DNA of 45,391 bases from Macrostomum lignano (GCA_002269645.1 NIVC01002261.1:1-45391); one strand, 5' to 3'. Positions 1 to 24,303 are shown, counted from the first letter of the stretch. Notes: generated from the letters alone by a model not told the origin. Made by a program: numbers and translations.

Positions 1-3000
1 CACGAAGATCTAGCAGGCGAATCCGAAGCCTCAGAAGAAGCATCAACAAACTGCGACGAGCTCACAGAGCAGGACTGTCGCCGAGAGACGACGACATGCA
101 GCCTCCATCCGAAAGAGCCGAACACCAGCTCGCTACCGCCGTAAGCAATACTACTGAAACTGCTTTTTTGGCAACATGTAACAACGCTAGCGAATATAAA
201 TGCATTTCGTGTTCAGTATTTCGTTTTGGTTGTTTATATCACGCTTTCACTTTGCATACTTCCCGCTTCAGGAGTGCGAGTGAAGCACGCTTGCGAGGGC
301 AAATCTCTGACCATCAGATGTCCATCCAGATACGTCATCCGGGTGCTGCGCGGATTCTATGGCAGAACATCTAACAAATACTGCGCTCGAGGACCCCGCA
401 AGACATACAAGTGCAGCAGCGGCCGAGCCAACAAAGTCATCGCTTCCAAGTGCAACAACCGGCGAGCATGCAGGGTGCGAAGCAACAACGCCGTCTTCGG
501 AGATCCTTGCCGCGGAACATACAAGTACATGACCGTGAGGTACAGATGCCAGCTGGCTTCATCGGTTGTGTCTAGCTACGCGAAGCGCAGAGCTCGACTT
601 GCACGACTGCACAAGAGACGATTGAACGCTCTTCGATCGAGGCACAGGCGCAGAGTCGCTCGACTGATCCGACTGCTGAGACGAGCTAGACGAGGATCGA
701 AGAGATGCGTCCGAAGGAGACGACCTTCCAGAGGTTAGTCGGCTATTCGGTCGACCGTTTATTTAAAGCAAAACAAATGCAGAAATTATTGATGCCCCAC
801 CTAGTAAATTGCTTCCTCAAATATCTAGTGAGACTTTGAGCTACGGATTTTAGAGTTGAAGCACTTTCACCGAAGTTCATACGTTGCTCCTCACCGAATC
901 ACAACATACTCAGGCAAGAAATGCGGCCGACGAACCTGCCGAAGGAACCAGAGTGCGTGACACGAAGATCTAGCAGGCGAATCCGAAGCCTCAGAAGAAG
1001 CATCAACAAACTGCGACGAGCTCACAGAGCAGGACTGTCGCCGAGAGACGACGACATGCAGCCTCCATCCGAAAGAGCCGAACACCAGCTCGCTACCGCC
1101 GTAAGCAATACTACTGAAACTGCTTTTTGGCAACATGTAACAACGCTAGCGAATATAAATGCATTTCGTGTTCAGTATTTCGTTTTGGTTGTTTAATCAC
1201 GCTTTCACTTTGCATACTTCTCCGCTTCAGGAGTGCGAGTGAAGCACGCTTGCGAGGGCAAATCTCTGACCATCAGATGTCCATCCAGATACGTCATCCG
1301 GGTGCTGCGCGGATTCTATGGCAGAACATCTAACAAATACTGCGCTCGAGGACCCCGCAAGACATACAAGTGCAGCAGCGGCCGAGCCAACAAAGTCATC
1401 GCTTCCAAGTGCAACAACCGCGAGCATGCAGGGTGCGAAGCAACAACGCCGTCTTCGGAGATCCTTGCCGCGGAACATACAAGTACATTACCGTGAGGTA
1501 CAGATGCCAGCTGGCTTCATCGGTTGTGTCTAGCTACGCGAAGCGCAGAGCTCGACTTGCACGACTGCACAAGAGACGATTGAACGCTCTTCGATCGAGG
1601 CACAGGCGCAGAGTCGCTCGACTGATCCGACTGCTGAGACGAGCTAGACGAGGATCGAAGAGATGCGTCCGAAGGAGACGACCTTCCAGAGGTTAGTCGG
1701 CTATAATTGTCTTGTTTTTATTAATTTTTGTAGATTTGTAAAAACCTTTTTCTAATTTCTTTTTTTGGTTTATATTGTTATTGAAAATACCTGCACCCTT
1801 TTTAGGTTTGTGTGCTAAAAAACGGTGCTCCAAAGGCAAGCGTTGCATTGTGAAACGAACTATCACAAAAGCGGGCCGTTTTCACTCAGAGAGCGTAGAA
1901 TGACAAAGGATATCGCAAGCAGATTCGAGCTCTGAAACTAAGGTTTGTAGAAGTCGGCGATCTGCAAAGTTGTCTTACGGACGGGCATCAGCTGCTTTTA
2001 AGAAGGCTATTCGGAAAGCATCTAAGGCGAAGAAAGCTGCCTCTGTTAAGAGCTTGAGAAGATCCTGGAGACTTCGCAGAAGATCTTACGTTTTGAAGCT
2101 TCGTAAAGAAAGAAGAAAGTTCTTGAAGGCTAGAAGAAGTCTCAGCCTGCGTTTTAGGCGTAGCCTATCAAGCCATTCTCGAAAGAATCGAAGAACTAAG
2201 ACTGCTGTACGAGCTGCTGTTTGTGTAGTGAATCAATGTTCAAAAGTCAAGTGCAAGTCGGGATTCTCTTGCAGGCATGTGAGGCGGTTTACAAAGAAGT
2301 TTAGCGCATTCCTTCGTCAGAAACGAGCTTTGACAAAGTCTTACTTTGCCAGTCACAAGAAGATCACGTTGGCTTACCGAAGAAGAAGTCGCCAAGCTGC
2401 AAGAAACTTCCGCAAGTATGCCGCAACTTATCGCTCGAGCTTCAAGAGCAAAATCTGGCAGTGCGAAGAAACGTCTCAGAGTTGCGTTCCGTCGTCGAGT
2501 AAGAAGCTTCAGAAGAAGTAGGCGCGCAGCTTTCAAGCAGTATCGTCGCTCAGTACGACTGGCTAGGCGCCGCTTGGCTCAAAGGCTTAGATCACTGCGT
2601 AAGAAGCAAGGCAAGGGAGTTTTCAAGAACCGCGTTAGGACTGTGGCTCGATGCATCAAAAAGGCGACGAGTGAGTGCTTTGTTTTTTTTAACTGCGACA
2701 GATATTTTAGTTACACTACTGCAATATACCTGCATTTCTTTTCGCCCACCTTTGCATATCTAGGATCCTGTCGAAAAGTTCGATGCTCAGCTGGAAAGCG
2801 CTGCGTGGTTAAAAAAGTTCCAACTTGGTGGTACAGGCTTTACCGCATCAGTGTGAAGAGGGCCTACAGACGGTTCCACACCCGGCTACGCCGCACTGTG
2901 CAAAAACTCCGACACCGACACAGAGTGCACCGTAATTTTTGGCACGGAGAAGCAGAAGAGCAGGAAAATCATTTTCTTTCTGGCTAAGACACGCTTTGAG

Positions 3001-6000
3001 ACGCATTCGCAGATCCCGGCGCTCTCGAGTCCGTCGTGTTCGCAGGTCAAGGCGTAACCTGAAAAGATTTGTTAGAAAATTGCGACGAGCTCGCTCTCGA
3101 CTGTGGGGAAGGTTCAGAAGAGCTGCCAAGGCGCTATGGAAGGCGATTCAAAAAGCTTTTTAGAAAATTCTCTCGACGAAAGGGACGGCGTGGACGTTCT
3201 TCTCGTAGACGACGCGTTCCAAAATCAGTTGTTCGCCGATTCAGAAGGAATCAGAAGAAGTACGCCAGACGCGTCTTCTCATTGAAAAGCTGGTTCGGAA
3301 GAAAAGCGAGAATTTTCAAGGCTCTGTATTACAAGTCTAAAAAGGCTACCAAAGCAGCAAAGAAATCGATCAGGAAAAAGATGCGCTCTTTGTATAGAAG
3401 AATTTCCAGGGTTTATCGAAGAAGACTGAAACGAGCTGTGGTTTCGTACTACAAGAAAAAGAGCATCCTTGCAACCTCTCTACAAAGAAGGCTTCGAATG
3501 TTGCGCAAGCGACTTGGCAGACGCAAGGGACGGCGATTTATTCGTCGGGCCATGTGTGTTGCCAAAAATCCTTGCAGAAGAAAGCGCTGTAGACGGGGAT
3601 ACAGGTGCAGAGTGCGCAGAGTCAAGTCAAAGAGGGGTCGAAAAATCTCTGTTGGACGCTGCGTCAGAAAGTCTAGTAAGTAATCGTTATGTTAATTCAA
3701 TAAATAGCAATATTTGCTATTCCTTCTGCCCATAAGCTCGTATTATTTCCGAATGAGGCAAACAGTGCATGATATTTTTTTAATTTCAGATCCATGCAGC
3801 AGAAAAAAGTGCGGAAAGAACCGTCGCTGTGTGGTGAGAAGGATCCCAACTCGAGCCTTCCGGCTGTACCGCTTCTATCTAAGAGTCAGTAGGAAACGTT
3901 TCCGTCTTCGAATGCATGGCATACGCAGGAGGCTTGGCCGTAGGCGTCGACGTCTGGCGGCCCGCGCTATCCGTCGAAACCGACGCTGAGACGATCAGCC
4001 GCTCGGCGATTCCGAGGCCGACGACGGGCAAGACGCTTCCGAAGTTTGAGACGGTCACTGAAGCGCACTCTTCGAAGGCATCGCCGTCGTTCGACCCGGT
4101 CGTACCGACGAATTCGCAATAAGCTAAGACGGCGTCTGAGACGCGCCACAAGGCGACAATACAGACGACTCATGCGAAACAAACGGCGCTACATTACCCG
4201 CGCCGTTTGTGCACCAAAGAGAGCAAGTGAGTCACATAATTTCATTTTTTCTCACATGCGGTTTTTGCACTTAGAGACGCGAGAGAGATATATTATTTTC
4301 CGATCAAATTCATTCAGATCCATGCAGTAAGAAGCGCTGCCCAAGTGGATCAGGTGCGTCGTGCGCAGAAGAGTTCCAAGGCTGTACAGGCGCTTCAGAA
4401 AAATCGTAAAGCGTCGCTATAGAAGATACGCTATTGCAAGGCGCCGGCTCTCCAAACTTAGTCGCAGAAGACGAGCGGCAACTGCTAGAAAGTTGAAGCG
4501 TTCCCTGAAAAGAAAATTGAGAAAGATCTGGAAAGCCTTTAAAAGACGCGGAGCCTTTAAACGAAGTGGGCGTTTGGTAGCTCGCTGTTATAAGCCAGGA
4601 AGTAAGTTGACAAAGGCCCGAGATATTCGCTTGCGGCTTGCGCATCGCTAACTTATGCTGTCTCTGAATTTTAGAGTTTTGCCCGAGCGGATACCGTCGC
4701 CGGGGACGAACTTGCGTCGGCTACTATCGGGTGTGCCGCGAACTTTCACTATGATTAGGAACAAGCGCGGAGGGCGGTGCATCAGTAAGCCAATTTTATT
4801 GTATAACGACTAGGAAAGCTTTCTCAAAGACTTTCCAGCGATTATCATAGATTATTAACTATTGCTCTCAAAAAAAATATTGCAGAGTTCAACAAGATTT
4901 GCAAGTCCGGCAAATTTTTGTTCAATAACCGCTGTTGGCGAAAATGCCCTCGTGGCACCAGACGCTCATCAAGACGGTCCTGCAAGCGTAAGTTAAAAAG
5001 GGGCGTTGTCTAGTTTTTTTGTGATTCTTTACTTATTGGTAAAGCAGAATATCAACTCAACCTGGCATTGCGTAATACGGTTTTAGTTGTCAAGTCATGT
5101 CCTGCATTCATGCTCAGTAGACGATGCGTCAAGAGATGTCCAAGAAGATTCGTCGCGGTGGGTCGTCGATGCAGGCGTAAGTTTAGAAGTCTGAAAACAA
5201 TCCTATGCTTTACTGCCTTTTGAACCGATTTCACAACTAGCCAAAATGTTTTTTACAGGATGCCCACGAAACTCTTTCCGACGAGGAAACAACTGCTACC
5301 GTGAGTAAATTCATTGTTAAAAACCAAATCTTGACTACTGACTCGTACAACAGAAATTTTTTGCTTACCGCGTTGCTTTCGGTTGGTGTATTACAGGCCG
5401 CAGAATTTACTGCCGCTCTGGATTTTCTTACCGAGGAAGATGCAGAAGTAGATGCCCGGCCCGCACTTATGCAAGAGGACGAAGATGCATCCGTAAGTAT
5501 TGCGCAAGAGAGCAAGCAGTCCAATGTCTGTGCAAAAACAAAAAAATCATTCAACCATCCAGTACAATAGTGGATTAATGCAATCAGCTACGACAAATTT
5601 TAGGAGCTCGCTGTCCACGCGGATCAAAGGCCAGACTCAGCATCCGAAGGGGCAAAATCGTTTGCATAAGTATGAACTATTTGATTTTTATATGCGGTTT
5701 AGAAGCGGGCTGCTTTTTAAATACGAACTCATTCTCATCTTCTGCATTTCCCTTTGCAGGAAAGCGCGGTTGCAAGCGTGGCCTGGTTTACTACTCTGGC
5801 TCTTGCCGATCGAAAGTGCCCCAGTGGAACCCGTCGACGACGCTGGTACTGCCTGAAGATCTGCAAGAAGGGCTTCATGAGAGTGGGATTCCGCAGACAG
5901 AGATGCATCCGGGCATACTGCTACAACAAGTTCCGCATTGGCCGGTCCTGTGTGAGAAAGTGCCCAGTCGGCTACATTGGAATTCGACGAAAGTGCCGAA

Positions 6001-9000
6001 GAGTTTCCATCTCGTGTCCCAAGGCCTACGTTAGGCTTGGCCGCGCGCTCTGCCTCAGAAATTGTCCAGCCGGTTTCACCAAGAGGGGCAAACAATGCGC
6101 GTACTCCGCCTGCCGCAAGGGAACATACAGGTACCGAGGCACCTGCATGAAGGGCTGTCCAGCTGGAACAAAGCGACGAGGATCGTACTGTTTCAGTAAG
6201 TTATTTGCCTGTTCAATGTAGCATGATTTAACCCTTTCAACGTCATAAAAGTTATTCCACACATCTAAAATTTTAGAGAGAAGCAAATGCCGTTTTGGTC
6301 GCTTCGCCTACGGAAAGCGATGCCTGGTGAGGTGCCCGCCTGGTCACTATCGAAGCTTTGCTAGACGATCGTGTGTCAGTGAGTATTTCTCTTTGATTCG
6401 GCTATGCTTCTCTTAGCTGTAACCGCTAATTCGATATACGCTATTCAATTGCTAAATCAAAACATTTCAAATCTCTTATATAAATCTATTATGTTCCAGG
6501 AATCAAGCGCTGCAAAAAAGGTCTGCTTAGATTCAGAAGACTCTGTCTCAAAACGTGCCCTCTTGGCTTCCGAAGAAAGAGACGAAGCTGCGTACGAAAA
6601 TACGTCTGCCGAAACGGAAAGATGTACAGAGGAGTCTGCATCGTTACCAAATGTCCTTCTGGAACTCACAACATTCGAGGATCGTGCGTTCGCACGCGTA
6701 AGTCTGATTAAAGGGTTGAATGAGGGATTAATTAATTGCAAAGCGCAATGACCAACTTACAAACATCTTTTTTTTCATTCCATCTTAGCTCGCCTCTGCC
6801 CGTCTGGTAGGCTGCTGCTAATCAAGCCGAGTGGTGCTAGATCTTGCGTTCGAGCCTGCCCAAGGACCTACACAGTTGTTAGGTCGCGGGGCTCTTGCAA
6901 GCCTACACGGTGTCCAAAGGGCATGTACCGTCTGGGAATAACATGCAGAAAGTCCTGTCCCAAAGGATTCCGTGCTCGAAGAGGTCGCTGTAGAGCTGTC
7001 AGAAAGAGCTGCAAAAGCGGCCTGTTCCGACTCCGCAGGCGTTGTGTGAAGCGATGCCCAAGAGGTTTTAAGGCCAGAGGAGGTCGCTGTAGACGAGTGC
7101 CTTTTAGATGCAAGAAAGGAACTTTCAGGTTCAGAAGGCGTTGCGTCAAGAAATGCCCGAAAAAATACACCGGTCGCGTCTACAAGCGGGCGAGAAGAGC
7201 GCCAGTCCGATACTGCAGGCCTATTAGAAGCTGCAAGAAGGGACAAGTGCTCGTTTACAGACGGTCACGGAGTCGCTACAGGTCAAGATGTGTCAGTGCA
7301 AGCAAGCCTTGCAAAACTGGTTACGTGCTGAGAAGACGTGTCGTACGATTTAATAGAGGCGGAAGGAGGGTGCGCAGAGTGCTAAGACTGTGCAAGAGAG
7401 CCAGGGAAAGCTGTGCCAAGGGATTGTTCTTGTTCCACGCCAAGTGCAGAAAGCAGTGCCCAAGAGGAATGAGGACATTGTTGGTTAGACGATCAAGAAA
7501 AGTTGTGCGCACATGCAAGCCAAGTAAGGCCGTGATTTCATCTGATTGAATAGAGAGAATTCTATATTTCCTAGAAAATAGTGTTTAAAAAGCTAATTTG
7601 CATACAAACTTTCAGAATGCGGTAGAAAGTTTGCTTTCCGAAGCAAATGCGTCAGAAGGTGCCCACGTGGATACACAGCCAGAAGATTCAGGTTTATCAA
7701 GTTCTGCAGGAAAGGTGCGAGTTTAATTTAATAAAGTGCCTGATTGAACAGTGTGCTAATGGAATATCTCCAGTTTCTCTTACAAGCATCGATTTAAACA
7801 TTTCAGATTGCCCAAGAGGAAGATTCGCGTTCAGAAATTCGTGCATCTCGCGGTGTCCAGCAGGCTACAGAAAGCGAAGATATCGAGTGTATTCCAGACG
7901 ATCAAGAAAGCTTGTTTCCATCACCAGCTGTGCCCGGAAAACTAGTAAGTTGGCTAGCCCTGATACTTAACCGAGATAACGTTTAATAACTGTCAATAAA
8001 TATTTCATTATTTTCTTTATTGTAGAATGCCCATCAGGATACCGAATAGTGTATCGTCTCAAGCGAAGTGCTAAGGGCAGGTCAATCCGACCAACTAAGG
8101 TCTGCAGACCAGGTATTTTTTAGCTTTTTGTCCTTCGGATAAGCAAGTAAAGGCGTAGCAAGCATAATAAAAATAACTATAACAACCTATATTTCTTCAG
8201 TGAGACAGAAGAGCTGCAGATATCCAACTGCTCTTGCCTTTGGTCGCTGCTTCCGCCGTTGCCCATCCGGTTACTACAGACGGTCCAGAACTGTTCGCGG
8301 GCGAAGACTTGGATTCTGCCTGCCAACAAAGCTGACAGTCCTTTGTCGCCGCCGTCGCTGTGGCAAGACAAAGATGTGCATCATCAGCCGAAGAACGAGA
8401 GTTTTCAGGGCCGGAAAGCGAGCAGTTCGTCGAACTGTACGAAAGCCCGTCTGTGTTCCACGATGTAAGAAAGAACATATTCTGTGCTTAAGATAGCATG
8501 ACTAGTATTTAAGTTTTCGAAATCGACTTCTGAATTTCCCATTTCCCTGCAGACTGCAAAGCCGGAACCTATCGCCACAGGCGCAGATGCGTTCGAAAGT
8601 GTCCACGCGGCTACATTAAACGCTCTTCGAAGCGTTTCAGAATGCACAAGGGCCGCAGAATGGCATACAAAGTGAGACTCTGCACGAGGAAACTGTGCAG
8701 GTATCCCATGGCCAGATATAGCACACGATGCGTTAAGCGTTGCCCAAGCAGATATGAAAAGAAAGTATATCGCCTCAGATTCCGCTACAGGCGATCGAAG
8801 TTCATCAGACGCTATGCTGTATGCCGACGCAATCTCTGCTCAAAGGTCTCCTGTTCAAGAAACCAGAAGGTGCATTGTAAAGACTCTTCCAGGGCGCAAA
8901 GATCGGCAAGTGGCTGTTTGTGCTAATAAAAACCCGTGTGCCCGGATGAGGTGCCGACGAGGATTTAAATGCCGAATTAGACGAGTATCTGGGCGCAAAC

Positions 9001-12000
9001 GAGCATCATGTGTTCCTTCTATGCCTTTCTGCAAGGCTGGATTAGTTGGCTTTGGCAAACGATGTCAGCGGCGTTGCCCTAAAAATTATAGGGTTTTGAG
9101 CAAGAAGATCGGAGGACGGCTGTACAGAATGTGCGCCAGAGACGCATGCTCACGAGGCCGATTTTTCTCAAGTGGACGATGCGTCCCGCGCTGTCCGAGT
9201 GGCTTTGCTGGAAAATCTATCAGATATTCTAGGTCATACATCTTCAAGTACTGCGCCCCGAAAGCTTGTAAGCGCAGACTGTTTAGACTTGGCGGACGCT
9301 GCGTGAAGCGCTGTCCTTCAGGATACAGGAGACGATACTTCAGGGCTAGACGAGGTGTTCGAAGATACTGTGCCTCATCTGCCTGCAGGAAAGGAACATA
9401 TAAGCTTGGAAAGCGTTGCGTCAAGAACTGCCCAAAGAATTACAACAAGAAAACAGTAAGAAAGGGGTCGAAATCTTATGCAGCTTGTGTGCCCAAGAAA
9501 TGCCCCGCCAAGTCTATGTTTATTAAGGGTCGCTGCAGAAAAGCATTGAAGGGCTGCTACGATAGGACATTCGCTTGCAAGGGTTGGGCTAGAAAGAAAC
9601 GGTGCTCAAAAAAGCTGGTTAAGTACTTGTGTCCAGCGTCCTGTGGCACCTGCAATCCTAAGAAGAGAAAGCTCTGCACCTGCATATCCATGGGCGATCC
9701 ACACTACCGTACATTTGATGGAAAATGGATCCACTTCATGGGAAAATGCAAGTATCTGTTGGCCAAGTCCAAACTACGAAAATCTTCTAGGTGCAACTTC
9801 TCTGTTGCAGCAAAGAATGAAGTTCGTGGAAAGAGACGAAGAGTCAGCTGGACAAAATTCGTTGACATAAACATTCATGGGTTGTCTATCCGCTTGCACC
9901 AGAAACGTCGTGTCTTCTTCAACGGCAAGAGAGTTCGAAGGCTACCTGTTTCGCTCTACAAGAGAGGCAAGAAGCTTCGAGTTTACCGTAGTGGAAATAA
10001 TGTTGTTGTTGAATCAAAGTACTGCGGCTTGTATCTTGAGTTCAATGGCAGATCAGTGGCCGAACTGCACCTTCCAAAATCCCGGTTCGCTGGAAAGGTT
10101 CAGGGCATCTGTGGAAATTGCAACGGAAATCCTAAGGATGATTTGAAAACCAGAAGTGGAAAGGATGTCTCCAAGCTGGGTTCAAAGGGATTCGTGCAGA
10201 TTGGACAATCCTATCTTGTCGCTGACCGCTCCACAAAGAGCTCGCGATGCAAAGTCAAACCTGCATCAACATCAAAATGCTCAAAATCAATGAAGCGAAA
10301 GATCAAATCTAGCAGATTCTGTGGCCTTATTTCAAACAAGAAGGGGCCATTCAGAGCTTGCTTGAAATCCGGAAAAGTTGATTATACCAAGATCTATAAG
10401 AGCTGCAAGTTTGACGTTTGTCAGTACCGAAAAGCTAAAAATCGCCGAAAGGCTGTGTGCGAGTCCCTGGAAACTCTTTACAACGCTTGCCTGGCCAAGG
10501 GATTCCGAGTGAGCTGGAGAAAACACCGGTTCTGTCCATTGAAGTGCGGTGCCAATTCTGTATTCAGAAGAAAAACAAGTGGCTGCCCAAGAACATGCGC
10601 CGATCTAGGTCGACGAAGAAAGTGCCGTCTGCCATCCCGAGAAGGCTGCGCCTGCAAAGAAGGCTACGTACTCAATGGAAAGAAGTGCGTCCCCGAAAGA
10701 ATCTGCGGCAAAGTAGTGCCACTTGATCTGGCCTTCGTTGTCGACGGAACAGATGACGTCAGTTCAGATGAGTTTGAAACACTGAAGAACTTGATCATCA
10801 AGCTTCTTACAAAGTACAGACTGTCTTCTAACTCTGTACGACCAGCAATTGCAGTGTTCGGCAGAACAAGCCCAACTGTAAGTCTGTTTAACCAGCGCCC
10901 CGGAAAAGCTGACTTCATGGCATTCGTCAGAAAAATGAAGAAACCAGGAGGATCAGCTGATAACTTGGATGCCGCTCTCCGGGTTGCCAACAAGGTGATG
11001 ATGAACCCAATGGGAGGCGCAAGACCAGCGGTTCCAAAGTATATTCTGTTATTGAAGAAGAGCAAAGTTCCAGCGTCATCGGAAAGTGTTGTCAAGAGCG
11101 AACTAGATTCGCTGAAAAAGGCTAACGTCCACGTGGTTGCTGTCACTCTCCCACCAACAAAACCAGGAAAGACCGACACGGCTATTGGTGGATTGTCAGT
11201 CATCCCAGCACGAGTGCCACCGTATCTTGCAATCCCGAAGATCACCAAGGAGCTGGAAAAGACAGCTGGCTGTACTTCCGGATATAAACGAAAAGGCAAA
11301 CGCTGTATAGATGTGAACGAGTGCGCAGCAAAGGTACCACCATGCCATTCTGACAGCACCTGCGTCAATTTGCCAGGCAGCTTCATCTGCCTCTGCCGCG
11401 AAGGCTTCCGACATGACAGATCCCGTGGATGTGTGTCTCTGAAGAAGGAGAAGTGCCCAAGCAAACCGAAATGCGACAATGGCTACCGCTTTGATAAGGC
11501 AAATGGCAAGTGTGTTGACATCAACGAGTGCAAAGAGAATCCGTGCTTGGGTGATAGTGCTACTTGCGTCAATACACCAGGCAGCTTCAAGTGCAAGTGC
11601 AAGACTGGTTTCGAGTACAACAAATACTTTGGTTGCGTTGACATCGACGAATGCAAAGGAAAAGATCCTTGCGCTGGTTCCGGAAAGTGCATCAATACAC
11701 TTGGCTCGTTCAAGTGTACCTGCGACGAGGGTTACACTTACAAAACCGGTCTCGGCTGCAAGGATATCGATGAGTGCGCAGCTGGATCGCATAATTGCAA
11801 GGGCGGTTCGAAGTGCATCAACACGGCTGGTTCTTACAACTGCAGCTGTGACTCCGGCTATCGCTACGAAAGCAACAAGTGCATTGACATTGACGAGTGC
11901 GCTGAGGACAGCAAACTCTGCGACGCATCTGCCACATGTGTAAACAAGAAGCCAGGCTATGAATGCCAGTGCAAACTTGGCAGCAACTGGGTGCACAAGG

Positions 12001-14316
12001 CTGGAAGAGGGTGCGTGCCAGATGAGAAGAAGGGAATGTCTCAACGAAAGGTTGACTTTATCTTCACCATTGATGGTAGCGACAAGCTGAAGTCATCTGA
12101 GAAGGACATCAAGGATTTCTTGACCCGCCTGCTCAATAAGTTTAAAGCCAATGAGTTGAAGGGTCTGAGCGTGCGTGCATCGGCCATTATTATGGGCAAA
12201 AAGGGAGGTGCGGATATCAAATTTAGCCAAGCTGACCTGTCTGGAATCGATGACAAGATCAAGGCGCTTAACTTCCCTGGAGGAAAGGCAAACCTTCTCG
12301 ACGGAATGAAGAAGGCAAATCAGGAGCATGCGAAGGCCAGAAACGGAAGCACGCCGATCGTGTTCCTCATCACTGGTTCGAACATTAAGCCGGGCGACAC
12401 CAACCTGCCAGCGATTAAGAGACTGTCTGATAACTTCAAGTCGACCGGAAAGTTTTTCACTGTCCAGCTGACACCGGCACGAGAGCCGTCCGACTGGAGC
12501 CCGCTGTATTCCCGCGACGAAATCAGCCACTACGTAACCGTGATCAGATCCGCTGACATTAACAGCATCTACAAGCTAATCTACAAGAGAATCTATCCGC
12601 TGATCAACTGTCCAGAGGGCTTTGTCAAGGTTCGCGGACTCTGCCAGCTGCAGACAGCAACAATCAAGTACTGCAAGACCGAAGACAAACAGTTGCGAGC
12701 AGTTGGAAGCACATGGCAAGAGGAGTGTTCCGAGTTCAAGTGCACCAACAGTGGAATCGAAGTCGTGTCCAGAAAGTGTCTTGGTTACGACGGCCAATGC
12801 TACTCAACGGAGGAGTACTTCCCATGCACTCAGGTCACTGGATCTCTGAGCTGGAAGTGTCGTTGCAAGTAAGGACCCTTACATTCAGTCTTACAAATTA
12901 TCTTTGCATCAACTATGGGTAAAAACGGTGCTTAGTTCTTGATGAACAAACTCAAAGTGACATTTTTAATAAGATTTCGGTACTATGCCATCTCCACATT
13001 TCAGACTGCGCACCCGCACAAACAAGAAGGGAAAGAAGGTCGAGTCCCTGCATTATCAGTCTATCGCCACCTCGAAGGAGAAGGTGCTCACAGAGAGTGG
13101 CCGCCAGTGTGTGTTCCCCTTCAAGTATCAGAACAAGTGGCTGTACAACTGCGACGAGTACAACGGCAGGTATTGGTGCTCGTACCACCGAATGCACGAG
13201 ACCGGATCATGGGGCTACTGCAAGATCAAGGAGAGCAAGAACCGCTGTACCGATCCGTTCAACCCGAGCAAGGTCTACATCGAGGGCGAGCGCTGGAATC
13301 ACGGCTGCAATGTGATGGAGTGCACCAAGACCGGATTGAAGAGAATCCCTAGTGAGTTTTTTGTTTTAAGCCCGTGACGATGTCTTCAGTCAGCAGCTGC
13401 ATTAATAGATACTTGTGTAGGTTTTTATTAAACTGTATGGATCTAAGAACGAGTAGATCAAAGATGGGGTCCTCACAGCAATCATAATAAAAGTTCTGCT
13501 GCAACAATTTGCAGAGTGCCAGGCCGCTGACAAGACTTGCAAAGCCCTGAACGAGGACGGCTATTCTTGCCACTATAGTGGCAGCCTGCACAAGAACTGC
13601 ATCTGCGTCCAAAACTCGGCCGGCTGGGGCAAGAACGAAGTGGTGACCGGCGACAAGGCCAAGGAAGTGAGCAGCTCCGGAGGCAGCGTCGTTAGCGTCT
13701 GCGTGGATCGCAGCACTGGAAAGCGATACGAGCAGGGACAGGAGTGGGTCAACTCGTGCTTCAAGTACAAGTGCACCGCCAAGGGAGGCGAGCTGGTTGA
13801 GTCCGGGTGCAAACAGAAGGACGGCAAGTGCCGCAAAATCGGCGAGAAGGGCTTCGACTGCGTTGTCAAGGGCAAATCGGCGAAAAGCTGCGAATGCGCT
13901 AAGGACAGCGCAGGCAATCCGACCCTAAGTGGCGTTGTATCAGGTAAGTTTCGTATCGGCTTAATGGTGGCTTCAAGATTTCTCTCGAAATTCTATGCGG
14001 CTAATGCAGAGTACTCAAAGTGAAGGTCGATTGACACGAGCATCTGAAGAGACTAGAGTTCGGATCAAGGACCACTAGAAGTTATAACTTCGTTTGGTCC
14101 TTGGTTCGTAAGGTCCTTGGTTTGGATATTATCTAGGAATGTAGATGGAAAGCGAGTAGATAGAAAAATGATGCGAAGAGAATGAGGGAAACTCACTGAA
14201 TTCAAACATTTCGCCCAACTGCAGGACGCAAGATGATCCAGGTGCTGAAGGTTTCGAAAGTGAGCACCTCGCTGAAGACCGTGGCTAAGACTGTGGCTTC
14301 CAAGACCAAGAAGTAA
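1..14316 (+). CDS. Giant Arg/Lys-rich, Cys-rich modular extracellular protein (adhesive/mucin-type, ap1-like); 5'-truncated, about 27 exons, apparent frameshifts
   Basis: Exons read from GT-AG sites and reading phase: <1-140, 272-733, 854-1100, 1231-1691, 1806-2670, 2764-3675, 3790-4226, 4318-4601, 4675-4784, 4886-4987, 5087-5176, 5259-5300, 5397-5492, 5604-5669, 5760-6195, 6277-6378, 6500-6697, 6789-7523, 7616-7714, 7807-7944, 8026-8112, 8201-8464, 8553-12868, 13005-13351, 13515-13943, 14010-14107 (uncertain), 14225-14316 (ends ...TVASKTKK-TAA). About 11.6 kb coding. About a dozen 1-nt indels must be assumed, mostly before 5900. The start and signal peptide lie outside the window. Confidence 0.88.
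286..549 (+). other. SUEL / rhamnose-galactose-binding lectin domain, copy 1
   Basis: HACEGKSLTIRCP...VLRGFYGR...C...C...KCNNRRACRV...VFGDPCRGTYKYMTVRYRC matches the Gal_Lectin consensus (CE, A/G-x-YGR, FGDPCxGTxKYLxVxYxC). Confidence 0.9.
918..4601 (+). other. Follistatin-N (FOLN)-like Cys knots alternating with long Arg/Lys-rich helical tracts
   Basis: Repeated C-x4-C-x5-C: KKCGRRTC, LCAKKRCSKGKRC, NQCSKVKCKSGFSC, SCRKVRCSAGKRC, NPCRRKRCRRGYRC, NPCSRKKCGKNRRC, NPCSKKRCPSG. Most are followed by a Cys-free basic tract and then one lone Cys. Confidence 0.7.
1245..1507 (+). other. SUEL lectin domain, copy 2 (1-nt deletion near 1420)
   Basis: Near-identical to 286-549. aaccgcgagc replaces aaccggcgagc and shifts the frame; YIT replaces YMT. 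Confidence 0.85.
4675..9540 (+). other. Array of furin-like Cys-rich repeats, extremely basic
   Basis: About 24 units of C-x2-G-x5/6-C-x3-CP-x-G-[YF]-x(n)-C, e.g. CKSGKFLFNNRCWRKCPRG, CKSGLFRLRRRCVKRCPRG, CRKGTYKLGKRCVKNCPKN. There are also half-units and three FOLN-like knots. Confidence 0.75.
9555..9653 (+). other. ShKT domain
   Basis: CYDRTFACKGWARKKRCSKKLVKYLCPASCGTC: six Cys with the C-x-D...C..W....C...CPxSCxxC pattern. Confidence 0.85.
9675..10708 (+). other. VWD - C8 - TIL cassette
   Basis: [29 protein letters not shown]...GICGNCNGNPKDDL (VWD); FCGLI...GPFRAC...SCKFDVC...VCESL..LYNAC (C8); CGANSVF..KTSGCPRTC...C...EGCACKEGYVLNGKKCVPERIC (TIL). Confidence 0.92.
10718..11260 (+). other. 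VWA domain 1 (degenerate MIDAS)
   Basis: PLDLAFVVDGTDDVSSDEFETLKNLIIKLL...VRPAIAVFG...ARPAVPKYILLL...LKKANVHVVAV. DxSxS appears as DGTDD. Confidence 0.85.
11270..12015 (+). other. Five calcium-binding EGF repeats plus partial EGF linkers
   Basis: DVNECAAK, DINECKEN, DIDECKGK, DIDECAAG and DIDECAED, each with C-[VI]-N-x-x-[GP]-[SG]-[FY]-x-C-x-C. Confidence 0.92.
12048..12600 (+). other. VWA domain 2 (degenerate MIDAS)
   Basis: KVDFIFTIDGSDKLKSSEKDIKDFLTRLL...VRASAIIMG...GGKANLLDGMKKA...STPIVFLITGS. Confidence 0.75.
12672..13897 (+). other. Three copies of an approximately 65-70 aa FN1/VWC-like Cys module
   Basis: C-x7/10-G-x2-W-x3-C-x4-CT-x2-G...C-x3-D-x2-C...C...C-x-C starting at 12672, 13246 (split by an intron) and 13700. 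Confidence 0.6.
13099..13221 (+). other. Fibronectin type II domain
   Basis: GRQCVFPFKYQNKWLYNCDEYNGRYWCSYHRMHETGSWGYC matches FN2 (CxFPFxY...C...WC...WGYC). Confidence 0.9.
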
Positions 14317-16991: not shown

Positions 16992-17150
16992 CCGGTAGGT
17001 GCGGCAGGTCACACCTGGTAGGTGCGGCAGGTCACACCTGGTAGGTGCAGCAGGTCACACCTGGTAGGTGCGGCAGGTCACACCTGGTAGGTGCGGCAGG
17101 TCACACCTGGTAGGTGCGGCAGGTCACAACTGGTAGGTGCAGCAGGTCAC
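16992..17150. repeat. 23-bp minisatellite, about 7 copies
   Basis: Unit ctggtaggtgc(g/a)gcaggtcacac. Confidence 0.95.
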
Positions 17151-17155
17151 GCGGA

Positions 17156-18638
17156 TCAGGCACGCGCCCAGACAGCTGCCGAGGCCTGCAAGCCGCGCGC
17201 GTGCAGCCGAGAGGCGGCGGCCGGTGCCAGGTGACCGCCGGGCTGCGTAGGCCCGACAGAGGCGGCGACCACAGCAAGGCTGCTGTCGCTGGAGCAGCTG
17301 CGACCAGAGAACAGCGCGTTCTCGAGGCTGTGCAGGAACCAATCCTGGTCGTAGTGCGCCGGGTCCTCCAGGCTCTCAGTAGATCTGCCCGCCACCTGCT
17401 GCATGGTGATGGCGTCGCCGGACAGAGATGAGGCCAGCGATGAGGCGCGCAGCTTCTTGCGTCTGCCCTGCAGACGGCGCTTGTAGATCAAAAAGGCCGC
17501 CACGCCTGCGGAAACGAAAAAAATAACTAAAAGTTGAGGAATCTTCATTTATCCTACTCAGCACCTATCGGAGAACTACTTAACAACTACTAGAGAACTA
17601 CTCAGCAACTGCTGGAGAACTACTCAGCAACTGCTAGAGAACTACTCAGCAACTGCTGGAGAACTACTCAGCAACTACTAGAGAACTACTCAGCAACTGC
17701 TAAAGAACTACTCAGCAACTGCTGGAGAACTACTCAGCAACTACTAGAGAACTACTCAGCAACTACTAGAGAACTACTCAGCAACTGTTAGAGAACTACT
17801 CAGCAACTGTTAGAGAACTAATCAGCAACTGCTGGAGAACTACTCAGCAACTACTAGAGAACTACTCAGCAACTGCTTGAGAACTACTCAGCAACTGCTA
17901 GAGAACTACTCAGCAACTGCTTGAGAACTACTGAGCAACTACTAGAGAACTACTCAGCAACTACTAGAGAACTACTCAGCAACTGCTTGAGAACTACTCA
18001 GCAACTGCTAGAGAACTACTCAGCAACTGCTTGAGAACTACTCAGCAACTGCTAGAGAACTACTCAGCAACTGCTTGAGAACTACTCAGCAACTGCTAGA
18101 GAACTACTCAGCAACTGCTAGAGAACTACTCAGCAACTGCTTGAGAACTACTCAGCAACTGCTTGAGAACTACTCAGCAACTGCTTGAGAACTACTCAGC
18201 AACTGCTAGAGAACTACTCAGCAACTGCTTGAGAACTACTCAGCAACTGCTAGAGAACTACTTAGCAATGTGCCACTCACCCCCAGATAAGAGCAGCAGT
18301 GAGACGGCCAGGCCGATGGCCAGCCAGGCAGCCGTGCTCAGCTCAACGAGTCCAGAAGCGGACGCGGCCATGGGCTGCCCCAGCCGGTCCCGGCAGGCAG
18401 CAGAGCTAGCGTTAGCCGCGGTGGCGTTGCCGGCGGCAGCCTCGCATGGATCCGGCAGGGGAGACGCGGAGACGGACGGCAACAGCCAGGAGGTGGCGTT
18501 GGGGTTGCCAGCAGGTGTGGTTGGCAGCGGCGCGTCTCGCATTGTTTCGTCTTGGCGATTGTCGGCTGCGCGCCCCGGCCCGACACGCCTCACGGCATCG
18601 GGGGAGGCGGGGATCGGCAAGGGCGGTTGCGAAAGCTG
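17156..18638 (-). CDS. Orphan single-pass membrane protein (no signal peptide seen; type III-like)
   Basis: Exon A about 18638-18281 (phase-1 GTGAG donor) joins exon B starting at 17505 (ttccgcag acceptor). The join gives AAWLAIGLAVSLLLLSG-G-VAAFLIYKRR, a hydrophobic helix with basic stop-transfer. N-glycosylation sequons (NAT, NAS) lie N-terminal. Stop at 17156, or a weak donor splices to a last exon near 16550. The start is uncertain. Confidence 0.7.
17571..18265. repeat. 22-bp minisatellite, about 31 copies, filling the membrane-protein intron
   Basis: Unit gagaactactcagcaact(g/a)ct(a/t/g); lies within intron 17506-18280. Confidence 0.97.
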
Positions 18639-22800: not shown

Positions 22801-24303
22801 AATCATCTACAAATCCTTTAAAAAACCTTTCAAATACCATATCTTGTTTCCCTGTTTGCAAAAAGTGACTACCATTGTCCAGATTCTAGACCCAGCCTCT
22901 CCTGTCTGCTCTTTTTTCTTTGCTCTCTCATCTCTAGCCTCTCATCTCTCATCTTTCATCTCTGTGCTCTCATATTTATCCTATTCTTTCTTTTTACTAC
23001 TTTCTCCTCTCTATTCTCTTATCTCTCTCATTTCTCTGATCTTTCATCTCTTGTCTTTCTCCTCTCTTACCTCTCCTCTCATCTTTATTCTGATTTATTT
23101 CTTCTCTCTCCTTTATCATCTTTACCCTCTTCTCTCTCTCTATTCTCTCTCTCTCTCTCTTTTATCTATTTCTTAGATAAAAAATGACTACAATATAGAA
23201 TTACCCAAAACTATAGCCATACTTTTTTAACATAATGGTAGTTATTATTCTTTAACTATAATAAAAATATAATAATAATAGGAATAATTTTTTAAAGAAT
23301 ATTATACTATAAAACACTTGTCATTTTGATAGAAAAAATGTTAGCAATTTACTGTGTTTACCACTTAAAGGTATTAAAATATGAAATTACTTGTCATGAT
23401 TTAAAAAAGGCAGTTGTATTTGTCTAGTGACCGGACAAATAGCGATATAGTTATTTGTCCGGTTATTGGATCCTGACTATGCTTTCCTATTCATCCGGTT
23501 AATACTGGACAAATAGACATTTTGTTATTTGTCCAGTTAAATTGATAACACTAAAATATCTAGTTTATAAAAACCACAAGGGTAAATATTCCTAGACTTC
23601 AAAGACTTCTTACTCGTGTCTTGATTAATATATTGTTATACTAGTATGTGTCTTATACACCAAATTATGCCGAATTGAATTGAATACACTGCTTTGCTTA
23701 TACACTCAAGTAATTCAAGAAAATATTAATCAGTATACAAGAAAAGGTCTAAAAAAATCTAGAATATTTATCACGAAACAAATAAGATATTTGTGTTAGC
23801 AATTTAACCAGACAAATAGCAAAAAGGCTCACCAGACAAATAACAACTGCCTTTAAAAAAAGAAGTATCAGTCAGAGTTTAGAATAAATAGTTAAACTTA
23901 AACTTAAAGCAAGGGATAAATAAATTACCAATAAAACCTCAATATTATACTTACGGTGATCGCTTGCTGTTTGGCATGCATCTTGGTAACGCAGTGTTTG
24001 GAAGTAAGGCAAGATGTCATATCTATCCATATACTTCAACATCTTTTGAAGCGTTCTGTTGTTGTCATCATCGATTTGCCCACAACGAAACAAATAACGA
24101 AAACCAAGTTCAGGCTTCTTGCTAGATTGGCTTAGCTTTCTATTCCAGTCTGATTCCTTTGGCATCAAGTCCCGGTACTTATTAATAGCGCGTCGGACTT
24201 CCTTCACAGTCAGTTTAGCCAAGATGCAGCGATGCAGTTCGCCGATGGACATGATTTCGGGACCAGCGTTGATACTCTCTGACTGAGTGCGCAACATTTC
24301 CAT
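19813..24303 (-). CDS. DEDD: Death effector domain-containing protein (DEDD family), 458 aa
   Basis: Exons 24303-23955, 21069-20431 and 20201-19813; both introns phase 1; total 1377 nt, open. Exon 1 is DED-like (LHR...LTVKEVR...LFRCGQIDDDNNRTLQKMLKYMDRYDILPY, RxDL-type motif). Exons 2-3 match the DEDD C-terminal region as I recall it: CDLRMRVRAEY...DPAQRQF..F.QAS..L.S.DLG.ILCDIRFSDLHYLEAFWRDYVSG.L..AIK.VFV...DY..GRQ.LLR. Confidence 0.92.
20228..20427. repeat. (GACT)n / (GTCA)n microsatellite forming DEDD intron 2
   Basis: About 50 units with a few GGCT variants; abuts the minus-strand donor GTGAGTCAGTCAG. Confidence 0.98.
21657..21832. repeat. 44-bp tandem repeat, 4 copies
   Basis: aggcaactatgctcttggttagtctgtcattcaagatgagaaac starting at 21657, 21701, 21745 and 21789; no spacers. 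Confidence 0.95.
22920..23175. repeat. CT-rich low-complexity tract
   Basis: Polypyrimidine tract (ctctcatctct..., ctctctctct). Confidence 0.8.
23407..23853. mobile_element. MITE-like element, about 447 bp, with 24-25 bp TIRs
   Basis: Left aaggcagttg-tatttgtctagtga; right reverse-complements to aaggcagttgttatttgtctggtga. Both flanks are ttaa/taaa-like. Internal 12-bp hairpins accggacaaata..tatttgtccggt and actggacaaata..tatttgtccagt. Confidence 0.75.

What the first reader, a model, noticed from the sequence alone, without database searches (positions are those of the whole stretch)
1806..4601. FOLN-like knots with variable 70-250 aa Arg-rich inserts between Cys3 and Cys4
Seen: short forms (NPCRRKRCRRGYRC-RVRRVKSKRGRKISVGR-C; NPCARMRCRRGFKC-RIRRVSGRKRAS-C) coexist with long forms. 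Long forms: LCAKKRCSKGKRC...VRAAVC, NQCSKVKCKSGFSC...RTVARC, SCRKVRCSAGKRC...IRRAMC (about 250 aa), NPCSRKKCGKNRRC...ITRAVC and NPCSKKRCPSG..C...RLVARC. The residues before the late Cys look beta-strand-like each time. Inference: one hairpin loop has repeatedly accepted protamine-like helical expansions, giving covalently closed polycationic bristles of tunable length.
Basis: inference. Interest (0 to 1): 0.7.

Follow-up and report, generated by a model that had tools for sequence, protein, structure and literature searches.

The report
Disulfide-clasped polycationic helices in flatworm protein
This stretch is four exons of a giant, very basic secreted protein of the flatworm Macrostomum lignano, in which small four-cysteine hairpins carry 76-250-residue arginine-rich helical loops; the feature is real and undescribed, but it is not a demonstrable follistatin (FOLN) domain.

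Summary
The window is Macrostomum lignano DNA. Positions 1806-4601 are exactly four phase-1/phase-1 exons of a gene spanning <1 to about 14313 on the + strand. A published footprint proteome lists its product as a 3590-aa protein of pI 11.47, and one peptide (AAVCVVNQCSK) lies inside the finding.

The six modules are real: C-x4-C-x5-C, a Cys-free stretch, then a closing Cys. However, all five long forms are broken in the window by one-base homopolymer indels. An independent M. lignano protein model reads straight through several of these, so they are probably assembly errors.

Inserts are 76, about 126 (three times) and 250 aa. They are 40-50% Arg+Lys, nearly free of acidic residues, Pro and Gly, and use all six Arg codons.

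AlphaFold gives the short form as a confident beta-hairpin whose turn is the insertion point. It gives one long form, at low confidence, as strand, 53-residue helix, turn, 52-residue helix, strand.

FOLN membership fails: 8 of 9 insert-deleted modules match nothing, and one matches below threshold.

The long forms share sequence and length, which points to exon duplication rather than repeated insertion. A further module appears to enclose a whole SUEL lectin domain. The likely role is polyanion binding in secreted adhesive or mucus material; this is inferred.

The parts
914..1100 (+). Exon X (second copy; the first copy is cut by the window start at 1-142). It holds knot K0 Cys1-Cys3 (922-956, KKCGRRTCRRNQ/RC) and the 55-aa Arg/Lys-rich N-arm. 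There are two one-base frame breaks, at 951/954 and 1028.
   Evidence: Three-frame reading. P0016 reads through both breaks. The homologue L001 has this exon in one frame.
272..733 (+). SUEL lectin exon, copy 1. It encodes an 8-Cys lectin domain, a 52-aa Arg-rich C-arm and the proposed closing Cys of K0 at 706-708 (GSKRCV).
   Evidence: Pfam SUEL_Lectin, E = 3e-20. MS peptides CQLASSVVSSYAK and SNNAVFGDPCR map here.
1231..1691 (+). SUEL lectin exon, copy 2, with K0 closing Cys at 1664-1666. It is frame-broken by a one-base deletion relative to copy 1.
   Evidence: The tandem copies 1-746 and 961-1704 differ by 4 one-base indels and 1 substitution.
1806..2670 (+). Exon A (865 nt, phase 1/1, length mod 3 = 1). 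K1 is Cys1 1811 to Cys4 2222-2224, with insert 1847-2221. K2 is Cys1 2237 to Cys4 2652-2654, with insert 2273-2651.
   Evidence: AG and GT sites. MS peptide AAVCVVNQCSK maps at 2213-2245. P0016 reads continuously across the K1 break region and the K2 break at 2445/2446.
2764..3675 (+). Exon B (912 nt, phase 1/1). K3 is Cys1 2769 to Cys4 3555-3557, with a 250-aa insert at 2805-3554 and two compensating frame breaks at about 2934 and about 3125. The short form K4 is Cys1 3573 to Cys4 3660-3662, with a 17-aa loop.
   Evidence: The AF2 model of K4 has pLDDT 91.7. The two K3 breaks have no outside confirmation.
3790..4226 (+). Exon C (437 nt, phase 1/1, mod 3 = 2). K5 is Cys1 3795 to Cys4 4208-4210, with a 126-aa insert at 3831-4207 and a frame break at 3986.
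   Evidence: P0016 contains the whole K5 module uninterrupted. AF2 gives E14-22, H24-76, H83-134, E137-145 at pLDDT 65.5.
4318..4601 (+). Exon D (284 nt, phase 1/1, mod 3 = 2). K6 is Cys1 4323, Cys3 4355-4357 and Cys4 4586-4588, with a 76-aa insert at 4358-4585. A one-base deletion at 4352 lies between Cys2 and Cys3.
   Evidence: P0016 reads CPSGSRC across the break.
8344..9011 (+). Three further modules of the same type lie among furin-like repeats. K7 is 8344-8454 (24-aa loop). K8 is 8837-8921 (15-aa loop, with a one-base insertion at 8866). K9 is 8937-9011 (12-aa loop).
   Evidence: P0001 reads NLCSKVSCSRNQRCIVK across 8866.
4675..14313 (+). The rest of the same gene. It encodes many basic furin-like Cys repeats, a probable ShK-like motif, VWD, TIL, VWA, five EGF_CA, a second VWA, fn2 and an Fn1-like domain.
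   Evidence: Pfam. P0001 mapping. Eighteen of 19 MS peptides of the 3590-aa entry map between 481 and 13724. The ShK-like call is my reading of the sequence and has no Pfam hit.

Best explanation
Positions 1806-4601 are four symmetric (phase 1/1) exons near the N-terminus of a real, expressed, giant secreted protein of Macrostomum lignano. It has about 3590 aa and pI about 11.5, and is uncharacterised.

Each module is a small four-cysteine clasp (C-x4-C-x5-C ... C) built on a two-stranded beta-hairpin. This resembles the N-terminal half of EGF and FOLN domains. In five modules the hairpin turn holds a Cys-free, acid-free, Pro/Gly-poor insert that is 40-50% Arg+Lys and carries a net charge of +38 to +112.

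The standard insert is about 126 aa. It most likely folds back on itself as two antiparallel amphipathic helices of about 52 residues, so that its ends return to the clasp. K6 is a shorter version, and K3 is roughly a double unit.

A sister module (K0) seems to use the same two arms (55 and 52 aa) as a stalk, with a whole SUEL lectin domain at its tip.

The array probably arose by tandem exon duplication of a module that was already long.

Functionally it would be a covalently closed, protease-exposed but unravel-proof polycation. Such a polycation would bind polyanions multivalently: sulfated or sialylated glycans of glycocalyx or mucus, partner glue proteins, or charged surfaces. That would give cohesion or adhesion in secreted material, by analogy with the Lys/Arg-rich regions of Mlig-ap1.

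Shown here: exon structure, translation of exon A, composition, and module homology. Predicted: the hairpin, the helices and their pairing. Inferred: the disulfide pattern, the lectin-on-a-stalk reading and the biological role.
For: Organism and gene:
- ORF 8754-12872 is 99% identical to M. lignano BOX15_Mlig000911g1.
- The only library hit for the insert region is the M. lignano SUEL-lectin protein A0A1I8I5M9.

Exons:
- Canonical GT/AG sites, introns of 73-114 nt, all phase 1.

The frame breaks are probably errors:
- The tandem copies differ by 4 indels and 1 substitution.
- P0016 and P0001 read through breaks at 951, 1028, 2445, 3986, 4352, 4736 and 8866. All of these are one-base changes in 2-3-nt homopolymers.
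- P0016 is itself out of frame where the window is intact.

Translation:
- The footprint proteome of Wunderer et al. 2019 (PMC6410801, Dataset S2) lists a 10771-nt transcript and a 3590-aa, 418.9-kDa protein of pI 11.47.
- Eighteen of its 19 peptides are encoded here, including AAVCVVNQCSK in exon A.
- My rough reconstruction gives 3576 aa, 416.7 kDa and pI 11.47. Without exons A-D it gives 2742 aa and pI 10.62.

Protein-level selection:
- All six Arg codons are used in the same proportions as in the confirmed ORF.

Structure:
- K4 hairpin, pLDDT 91.7. K5 strand-helix-turn-helix-strand. Helical periodicity.

Module homology and length conservation.

K0 layout:
- It is conserved, with arm lengths of about 54 and 52 aa, in a 71%-identical homologue.
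Against: - No long form is intact in the window itself, and the two K3 breaks have no outside confirmation.
- The K5 model is low confidence (pLDDT 65.5, pTM 0.27, no alignment). Polycationic helices with +63 net charge may be disordered unless bound to polyanions.
- Helical periodicity is not significant for K1, K2 and K6.
- The length and pI match is rough. My middle exons are hand-picked and the N-terminus is outside the window.
- The tissue of expression is unknown. The footprint dataset also contains tubulins, so presence there does not prove a glue role.
- No orthologue from a named second species was available.
Confidence: 0.55

Rival explanations
1. The long 'inserts' are not part of any protein. 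This copy would be a decaying pseudogene or would carry pseudo-exons, and the reader manufactured long forms by joining frames across stops.
For: Every long form is frame-broken in the window, whereas the 4.1-kb ORF 8754-12872 has no break. All the exons are phase 1/1, so they could be skipped without harm downstream.
Against: - The breaks are one-base homopolymer changes that independent protein models read through.
- The same indel-dominated pattern (4 indels to 1 substitution) separates two 99.3%-identical copies.
- The MS peptide AAVCVVNQCSK lies in exon A, between the K1 and K2 inserts.
- The published length, mass and pI need about 830 extra very basic residues.
- Arg codon usage matches the confirmed ORF.
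Confidence: 0.05
2. The clasp is not of EGF/FOLN type. It would be a lineage-specific four-Cys unit, perhaps a variant of the neighbouring furin-like repeats, with a different pairing. For example, there could be a small Cys1-Cys2 loop plus a Cys3-Cys4 cross-strand staple that alone closes the insert.
For: - Pfam FOLN and FIMAC_N hits are sub-threshold and confined to one module.
- No follistatin-family chain appears in the PDB searches, and Foldseek finds nothing.
- In the K4 model, Cys3 (residue 15) and Cys4 (residue 33) lie on facing strands (the register is my inference).
- The modules are interspersed with furin-like repeats.
Against: - The C-x4-C-x5-C spacing, the N-P-C start and the Gly before Cys3 are those of FOLN/EGF N-terminal halves. 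This comes from the Pfam partial alignment and from general knowledge.
- The only weak domain-type hits are FOLN and its FIMAC relative.
Confidence: 0.3
3. The inserts are intrinsically disordered polycationic linkers, not helical hairpins. The cysteines would serve mainly for intermolecular cross-linking of a secreted gel.
For: - Extreme net charge (+38 to +112).
- Low-confidence K5 model.
- No significant periodicity in K1, K2 and K6.
- VWD-type proteins commonly multimerise through disulfides (general knowledge).
Against: - Near absence of Pro and Gly, with about 35% regularly spaced hydrophobic residues.
- Insert length is conserved at about 126 aa in three modules, and arm lengths of about 52-55 aa recur in K0 and its 71%-identical homologue.
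- There are exactly four Cys per module and an even Cys count per exon.
Confidence: 0.25
4. The architecture is as described, but the protein serves another secretion: egg-shell or cement material, rhabdite or epidermal mucus with antimicrobial polycations, or a reproductive secretion.
For: - Expression site is unknown. RNA815_38 is not mentioned in any searchable main text, nor in the held supplements of the positional RNA-Seq paper.
- The footprint samples also contain cytoskeletal contaminants.
- Arg-rich amphipathic helices are typical of membrane-active peptides (general knowledge).
Against: - It was detected in two separate protein lists within the footprint dataset.
- Its domain set (galactose-type lectin, VWD, TIL, EGF_CA) is the one reported for temporary-adhesion proteins Sfp1 and Mlig-ap1 (PMC6410801).
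Confidence: 0.3

Closest known systems
FOLN, the follistatin/osteonectin-like EGF subdomain (Pfam PF09289), and the related FIMAC N-terminal domain (PF21286)
   Same: - Both have C-x4-C-x5-C spacing, often an N/D-P-C start, and a Gly two or three residues before Cys3.
- A beta-hairpin follows Cys3, with a closing Cys at the end of the second strand.
- One module gives weak partial hits to both models.
   Different: - Scores are far below the gathering cut-offs (10.7 against 21.1 bits; 14.3 against 27).
- There is no C-x-C fifth cysteine and no following Kazal domain.
- Hairpin loops are 12-250 aa instead of about 9, and the composition is extremely basic.
- No solved FOLN-containing chain is retrieved.
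[quoted passage not shown] 2019, PMC6410801)
   Same: - Same species.
- Both are giant secreted proteins with a lectin, VWD-TIL and Ca-binding EGF core plus very large polycationic regions.
- Both are found in footprint mass spectrometry.
- Trypsin destroys the basic regions, so few peptides are recovered.
   Different: - Mlig-ap1 has a C-type lectin, 17 EGF domains and low-complexity GRK/KR repeats. An example is the Pro-rich peptide used for its antibody.
- Here the lectin is SUEL-type and there are two VWA domains.
- The basic segments here are Pro-poor, amphipathic and enclosed one by one in four-Cys clasps.
- No sequence comparison was possible because the Mlig-ap1 sequence was not held.
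Sea star footprint protein 1 (Sfp1)
   Same: Both combine galactose-binding (SUEL-type) lectin, VWD, C8 and Ca-binding EGF domains with high Cys content in a temporary-adhesion footprint protein, as described in PMC6410801.
   Different: No polycationic clasped inserts are reported for Sfp1. This is from the literature only and was not tested here.
RhTx, a 27-residue two-disulfide centipede peptide (PDB 2mva)
   Same: It is the only solved chain retrieved by the module profile. All four Cys align in the same order and with similar spacing (E = 0.067, 16.3 bits). This shows that such a four-Cys unit can be a free-standing fold.
   Different: The match is not statistically significant. RhTx has a very short loop and an unrelated biology (a venom peptide), and common ancestry is unlikely.
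Protamines and other arginine-rich, cysteine-cross-linked polycations
   Same: Both have very high Arg content and disulfides that lock a polycation, and both bind polyanions electrostatically (general knowledge).
   Different: - Protamines are small, nuclear and intronless or simple.
- They lack a hydrophobic helical stripe and are not embedded in extracellular Cys-knot modules.

Membership tests
FOLN (PF09289) | Profile-HMM match at or above Pfam's gathering score | tested here: not met
   The native ORFs gave no FOLN hit at E <= 0.1. Among insert-deleted modules, 8 of 9 gave nothing. K3 scored 10.7 bits against a cut-off of 21.1 (E = 0.63), over profile positions 1-14 of 22 only. Adding five more modules changed nothing.
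FOLN (PF09289) | Cysteine framework C-x4-C-x5-C-x(~9)-C-x-C, the last Cys bonding into a following Kazal domain | tested here: not met
   The first three Cys have the right spacing in all 14 modules. After Cys4 comes V, A, I or Y, never x-C. No Kazal domain is found anywhere in the gene.
FOLN / EGF-like N-terminal subdomain (fold level) | Two-stranded beta-hairpin between Cys3 and Cys4 | tested here: met
   The AF2 model of K4 with a 9-row alignment has mean pLDDT 91.7, with strands 13-21 and 27-35. The same two strands flank the insert in the K5 model. This is a prediction only.
FOLN / EGF-like N-terminal subdomain (fold level) | Disulfide pairing Cys1-Cys3 and Cys2-Cys4 | not testable with these tools
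   The prediction tool returns no coordinates, and there are no experimental data.
FOLN / EGF-like N-terminal subdomain (fold level) | Structural similarity to solved FOLN or EGF domains | tested here: inconclusive
   Foldseek against the PDB gave no match better than E = 4.6 and found only generic hairpins. The 36-residue query is too small.
Mlig-ap1-type temporary-adhesion protein | Giant secreted protein with a lectin + VWD/TIL + EGF_CA core and very large Lys/Arg-rich regions | tested here: met
   SUEL lectin, VWD, TIL, five EGF_CA and VWA domains. Exons A-D are 43.5% K+R with pI 12.0. The lectin type and the KR organisation differ from Mlig-ap1.
Mlig-ap1-type temporary-adhesion protein | Present in secreted footprints | tested here: met
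   Peptides appear in Dataset S2 (footprint MS) of PMC6410801. Contaminant proteins are in the same lists.
Mlig-ap1-type temporary-adhesion protein | Expression restricted to adhesive gland cells, and loss of adhesion on RNAi | not tested
   No expression or knock-down data were found for RNA815_38.
SUEL-type lectin domain (PF02140), for the neighbouring K0 module | Profile match above threshold, with eight conserved Cys | tested here: met
   72.8 bits against a cut-off of 31.4. There are eight Cys between HACEG and VRYRC.

The most novel reading that the evidence does not exclude
The about 126-aa insert is a defined structural unit. It would be a disulfide-clasped, two-helix polycationic stalk about 8 nm long, which evolution has copied, shortened (K6), doubled (K3, possibly by losing the four cysteines of an internal clasp) and used to present a whole SUEL lectin domain at its tip (K0). 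This would be a previously undescribed building block for extracellular glue or mucus proteins. It would combine charge-based binding to polyanions with sugar recognition on one rigid, covalently closed arm.
Probability: 0.3. Interest if true: 0.65.

Novelty: new variant of a known kind. Interest (0 to 1): 0.5.

Why it matters
Temporary bioadhesion in flatworms is a model for reversible wet glues. The role of the huge Lys/Arg-rich parts of Mlig-ap1 is still called enigmatic by its authors.

This gene shows a second, better-ordered solution in the same animal. Polycationic helices of fixed length are each locked at the base by a tiny four-cysteine hairpin, in a protein that is found in footprints but has never been studied.

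If the stalk model holds, it gives a compact unit of 76-126 aa that can be expressed on its own. That unit could be used to test how charge density, helix length and covalent closure contribute to cohesion and to release by polyanions, and it could be copied for biomimetic materials.

It also gives a clear example of an EGF-like hairpin tolerating insertions from 12 aa up to a whole nested domain.

On the practical side, this part of the assembly carries about one single-base indel per 300 nt. Gene models here are therefore truncated or patched with false introns.

Tried and rejected
1. Word-indexed homologue search with the stitched 851-aa region, and with the K0 unit. The first gave nothing and the second gave one hit. 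Both stop at 8000 candidates because Arg-rich words saturate the index, and they missed P0016, which exists. These negatives are therefore uninformative.
2. Exact look-up of the 1372-aa ORF: not on record.
3. Tandem-repeat and DNA self-similarity scans of 1-9000. The modules are not recent DNA repeats. Only the 961-bp duplication at the window start was found.
4. Foldseek of the 36-residue K4 model against the PDB: generic hairpins only.
5. Joint MAFFT alignment of whole long forms. The low-complexity inserts align poorly, so K5 was folded alone.
6. Test for a relic, cysteine-less knot inside the K3 insert (FSRRKGRRGRSS-RRRRVP at insert residues about 120-142). It is the top site for a Cys-masked knot matrix across all inserts, but 222 of 1000 shuffles score as well. 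It is kept only as a lead. Two observations support it: every Pro in the inserts follows R-R-[VI] or R-R-R-V, and the second half of K3 aligns end to end with K5 (z = 3.1).
7. An internal duplication within K3 (first half against second half): not supported (z = 0.3).
8. Literature look-ups for RNA815_38: no expression data.
10. An intron explanation for the frame switches was rejected. The switch sites lack splice signals, lie in purine-rich coding-like sequence, and are read through by independent protein models.

Full report
**What the window is**

The 1372-aa ORF at 8754-12872 is 99% identical to the Macrostomum lignano hypothetical protein BOX15_Mlig000911g1 (P0001, 2079 aa). It carries VWD, TIL, two VWA and five EGF_CA domains. 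Upstream ORFs on the same strand encode a SUEL lectin domain and many very basic furin-like cysteine repeats. The finding therefore lies in a multi-exon animal gene that runs on the + strand from before position 1 to about 14313.

**Exon structure**

- The region 1806-4601 is exactly four exons: A 1806-2670, B 2764-3675, C 3790-4226 and D 4318-4601.
- Acceptors are pyrimidine-rich and end in AG. Donors are GTGAGT or GTAAGT. Introns are 93, 114, 91 and 73 nt. All boundaries are phase 1.
- At the B/C and C/D junctions the split codon is A|AT = Asn.

**The modules**

- Six units of the form C-x4-C-x5-C ... C lie in these exons: K1 and K2 in A, K3 and K4 in B, K5 in C, and K6 in D.
- Three more (K7-K9) lie at 8344-9011, among the furin-like repeats.
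- The motif is strand-specific: 8 occurrences on the + strand against 1 on the - strand.
- Loop lengths between Cys3 and Cys4 are 12, 15, 17 and 24 aa in the short and medium forms. In the long forms they are 76, about 126 (K1, K2 and K5) and 250 aa.
- Residues just after Cys3 and just before Cys4 are alike in short and long forms.

**The long forms are broken in the window**

No long form is a continuous frame:

- K1 has an in-frame TGA, or 2-3 shifts, at 1880-1950.
- K2 shifts at 2445/2446.
- K3 shifts at about 2934 and back at about 3125.
- K5 shifts at 3986.
- K6 shifts at 4352, between Cys2 and Cys3.
- Exon lengths modulo 3 are 1, 0, 2 and 2, which agrees with these breaks.

Three lines of evidence indicate that the breaks are sequence errors and not biology:

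1. The window begins with a tandem duplication (1-746 and 961-1704). Its copies differ by four one-base indels and only one substitution. That is the signature of uncorrected long-read consensus errors.
2. An exhaustive HMMER search with window:3129-3680 found a single protein, P0016 (UniRef100_A0A1I8I5M9, M. lignano 'SUEL-type lectin domain-containing protein', 2640 aa).
   - Exact-match mapping shows that P0016 reads straight through the breaks at 951/954, 1028, 2445/2446, 3986, 4352 and 4736.
   - P0001 reads through the break at 8866.
   - Each of these sites is a one-base length change in a 2-3-nt homopolymer.
   - P0016 is itself out of frame at 7018-7292, 7817-7930 and 8202-8360, where the window is intact. 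The two sources therefore carry independent errors.
3. A short-read (Logan) contig from run SRR24204725, carrying a 71%-identical homologue, has each corresponding exon in a single frame.

The two K3 breaks have no outside confirmation.

**Evidence that the region is translated**

- Dataset S2 (footprint mass spectrometry) of Wunderer et al. 2019 (PMC6410801) lists a 10771-nt transcript (RNA815_38 / RNA1310_79.1). It encodes a protein of 3590 aa, 418.9 kDa and pI 11.47.
- Eighteen of its 19 listed peptides are encoded on the + strand of this window between 481 and 13724. The nineteenth spans an exon junction.
- One peptide, AAVCVVNQCSK, is at 2213-2245. This is the Cys4 of K1 followed by the Cys1 of K2, inside exon A.
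- That peptide also lies inside a 332-nt 'intron' that the P0016 model uses to skip a frame problem, so that intron is wrong.
- A rough reconstruction (one SUEL exon + exons A-D + hand-picked middle exons + P0001) gives 3576 aa, 416.7 kDa and pI 11.47. Without exons A-D it gives 2742 aa and pI 10.62.
- This agreement is only approximate, because the N-terminus is outside the window and the middle exons are my choice.
- The three peptides specific to a 3863-aa, pI 12.13 paralogue in the same dataset are not encoded here.
- In the inserts, Arg is encoded by all six codons in nearly the same proportions as in the confirmed ORF. The Arg richness is therefore a property selected in the protein, not a simple DNA repeat.

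**Is it FOLN?**

- Native ORFs give no FOLN hit.
- Eight of nine insert-deleted modules give nothing even at E <= 10.
- Insert-deleted K3 gives FIMAC_N at 14.3 bits (cut-off 27) and FOLN at 10.7 bits (cut-off 21.1). Both hits cover only the Cys1-Cys3 half. Five extra modules change nothing.
- Profiles of 9 and 14 modules, searched against all PDB sequences, retrieve only the 27-residue centipede peptide RhTx (E = 0.21 and 0.067). No follistatin, SPARC, agrin or factor I chain is retrieved.
- The modules lack the C-x-C fifth cysteine and any Kazal domain.
- What they share with FOLN and EGF is the N-terminal framework (N/D-P-C, C-x4-C-x5-C, Gly before Cys3) and a hairpin.
- AlphaFold2 with a 9-row alignment predicts K4 at mean pLDDT 91.7, with strands 13-21 and 27-35 and a turn at 22-26.
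- Foldseek on this 36-residue model is uninformative.
- Cysteine pairing could not be examined.
- Verdict: the modules resemble the EGF/FOLN hairpin half, but membership is not shown.

**The inserts**

- Composition is 40-50% Arg+Lys, at most 2% Asp+Glu, about 3% Pro+Gly, about 35% hydrophobic residues, and no Cys. Net charge is +38 to +112.
- Hydrophobic residues recur at the alpha-helical period in K3 and K5 (1 of 1000 and 0 of 1000 shuffles). The signal is weak in K2 and K6 and absent in K1.
- K5 was stitched exactly as P0016 reads it and folded without an alignment. It gives strand 14-22, helix 24-76, turn, helix 83-134 and strand 137-145, at low confidence (pLDDT 65.5, pTM 0.27).
- This is a two-helix hairpin sprouting from the turn of the clasp's beta-hairpin.

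**Origin of the long forms**

- K3-K5 and K1-K2 inserts are more alike than shuffled controls (z = 5.1 and 4.7).
- K3, K5 and K6 share VV[KR][KR][VI]P..[FY]RLYR after Cys3.
- K1, K2 and K5 have the same insert length.
- The second half of the K3 insert aligns end to end with K5 (z = 3.1).
- The long forms therefore look like copies of one long ancestor made by exon duplication, not like repeated independent insertions.
- A possible relic clasp in the middle of K3 is only a lead.
- In the other direction, the homologous contig L001 carries CVTRRVGRSRRLVARC. This is almost K6 without its insert, so loop length has clearly changed by insertion or deletion at this point.

**An extra module, K0**

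- P0016 and L001 show that the exon before the SUEL exon (914-1100, broken twice in the window) starts with another C-x4-C-x5-C.
- The order that follows is: a 55-aa basic arm, the eight-Cys SUEL domain, a 52-aa basic arm, and then a lone Cys in the usual context (GSKRCV, at 706-708 and 1664-1666).
- The cysteine count (3 + 8 + 1) fits a clasp that closes around the whole lectin domain.
- The arm lengths match the two K5 helices (53 and 52 residues).
- The layout, and arm lengths of about 54 and 52 aa, are kept in the 71%-identical homologue.

**How it probably works**

The exons encode a chain of covalently closed polycationic arms at the N-terminal side of a VWD/VWA/EGF multimerising core. 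Such arms would bind polyanions multivalently while the clasp keeps each arm from unravelling.

In M. lignano, heparin-like polyanions block attachment and free cations block release. Both effects are attributed to the Lys/Arg regions of Mlig-ap1. This protein is in the same footprint samples, so a cohesive or adhesive role is the most economical reading. Its site of expression is unknown, however, and other secretions are possible.

**Novelty**

The gene is in databases only as truncated or patched hypothetical models and as an unremarked line in a proteomics table. I found no description of the clasped inserts. I rate it a new variant of known kinds: an EGF-like hairpin module and the Lys/Arg-rich region of a flatworm glue protein.

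Noticed in passing
1-746 and 961-1704: A tandem duplication of [exon X + intron + SUEL exon], 99.3% identical. The copies differ by four one-base indels and one substitution. The first copy starts at the window edge, so more copies may lie upstream, or the duplication may be an assembly artefact. P0016 contains only one unit.
   Followed up: partly
914-1100, 272-733 and 1231-1691: Module K0: a three-Cys clasp start, a 55-aa basic arm, a complete SUEL lectin domain, a 52-aa basic arm and a lone closing Cys. This suggests a lectin displayed on a clasped two-helix stalk. The layout is conserved in locus L001.
   Followed up: partly
L001 200-900 and 1275-2015 (Logan contig, run SRR24204725): A homologous gene fragment, 71% identical in the SUEL unit. 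It has three short or medium clasps (loops of 16, 24 and 14 aa) in phase-1 exons upstream of its K0 unit. The organism of the run is not given by the tools.
   Followed up: partly
4565-4601: The UniProt model P0016 uses a weak donor (GTGGGC) 36 nt upstream of the strong GTAAGT donor. This removes SGRLVARCYKPG and with it the closing Cys of K6. It is probably a model artefact, but it could be an alternative splice form.
   Followed up: no
3160-3230 (K3 insert residues about 120-142): A possible relic of a clasp whose cysteines were replaced (FSRRKGRRGRSS followed by RRRRVP). This would make K3 a fusion of two units. It is the top-scoring site but is not significant against shuffles.
   Followed up: yes
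4675-8860: A long series of very basic furin-like repeats (C-x2-G-x6-C-x3-C-P-x-G ... C) in many small exons. Their Cys3-Cys4 loops are also Arg-rich and variable in length. There is a further frame break at 4736. Pfam Furin-like_2 matches are below threshold.
   Followed up: partly
9540-9640: A probable ShK-like six-Cys motif (CYDRTFACKGWARKKRCSKKLVKYLCPASCGTC) lies just before the VWD domain. Its peptide YLCPASCGTCNPK was seen by mass spectrometry. There is no Pfam hit; this is my reading.
   Followed up: no
16994-18268, 20228-20427, 21657-21833, 28772-30658, 31457-32248, 35989-37669, 38691-39679, 40080-40465, 45049-45391: The right two-thirds of the window are crowded with minisatellites (periods of 4-44 nt, up to 90 copies). 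These create long spurious ORFs on both strands.
   Followed up: no
21000-28000 and 41000-44000: There are sharp composition changes: 27-33% G+C over 7 kb, then 60-66% G+C, against about 47% in the gene studied.
   Followed up: no
39805-40070: An exon encoding part of a T-box DNA-binding domain (Pfam T-box, E = 4.7e-32). It runs straight into a 20-nt minisatellite.
   Followed up: no
28392-28784: An ORF with a Ly-6/uPAR three-finger-like cysteine pattern. The Pfam UPAR_LY6 score is 21.3 bits, just below the 24.8 cut-off. It lies directly upstream of a 21-nt x 90 minisatellite.
   Followed up: no
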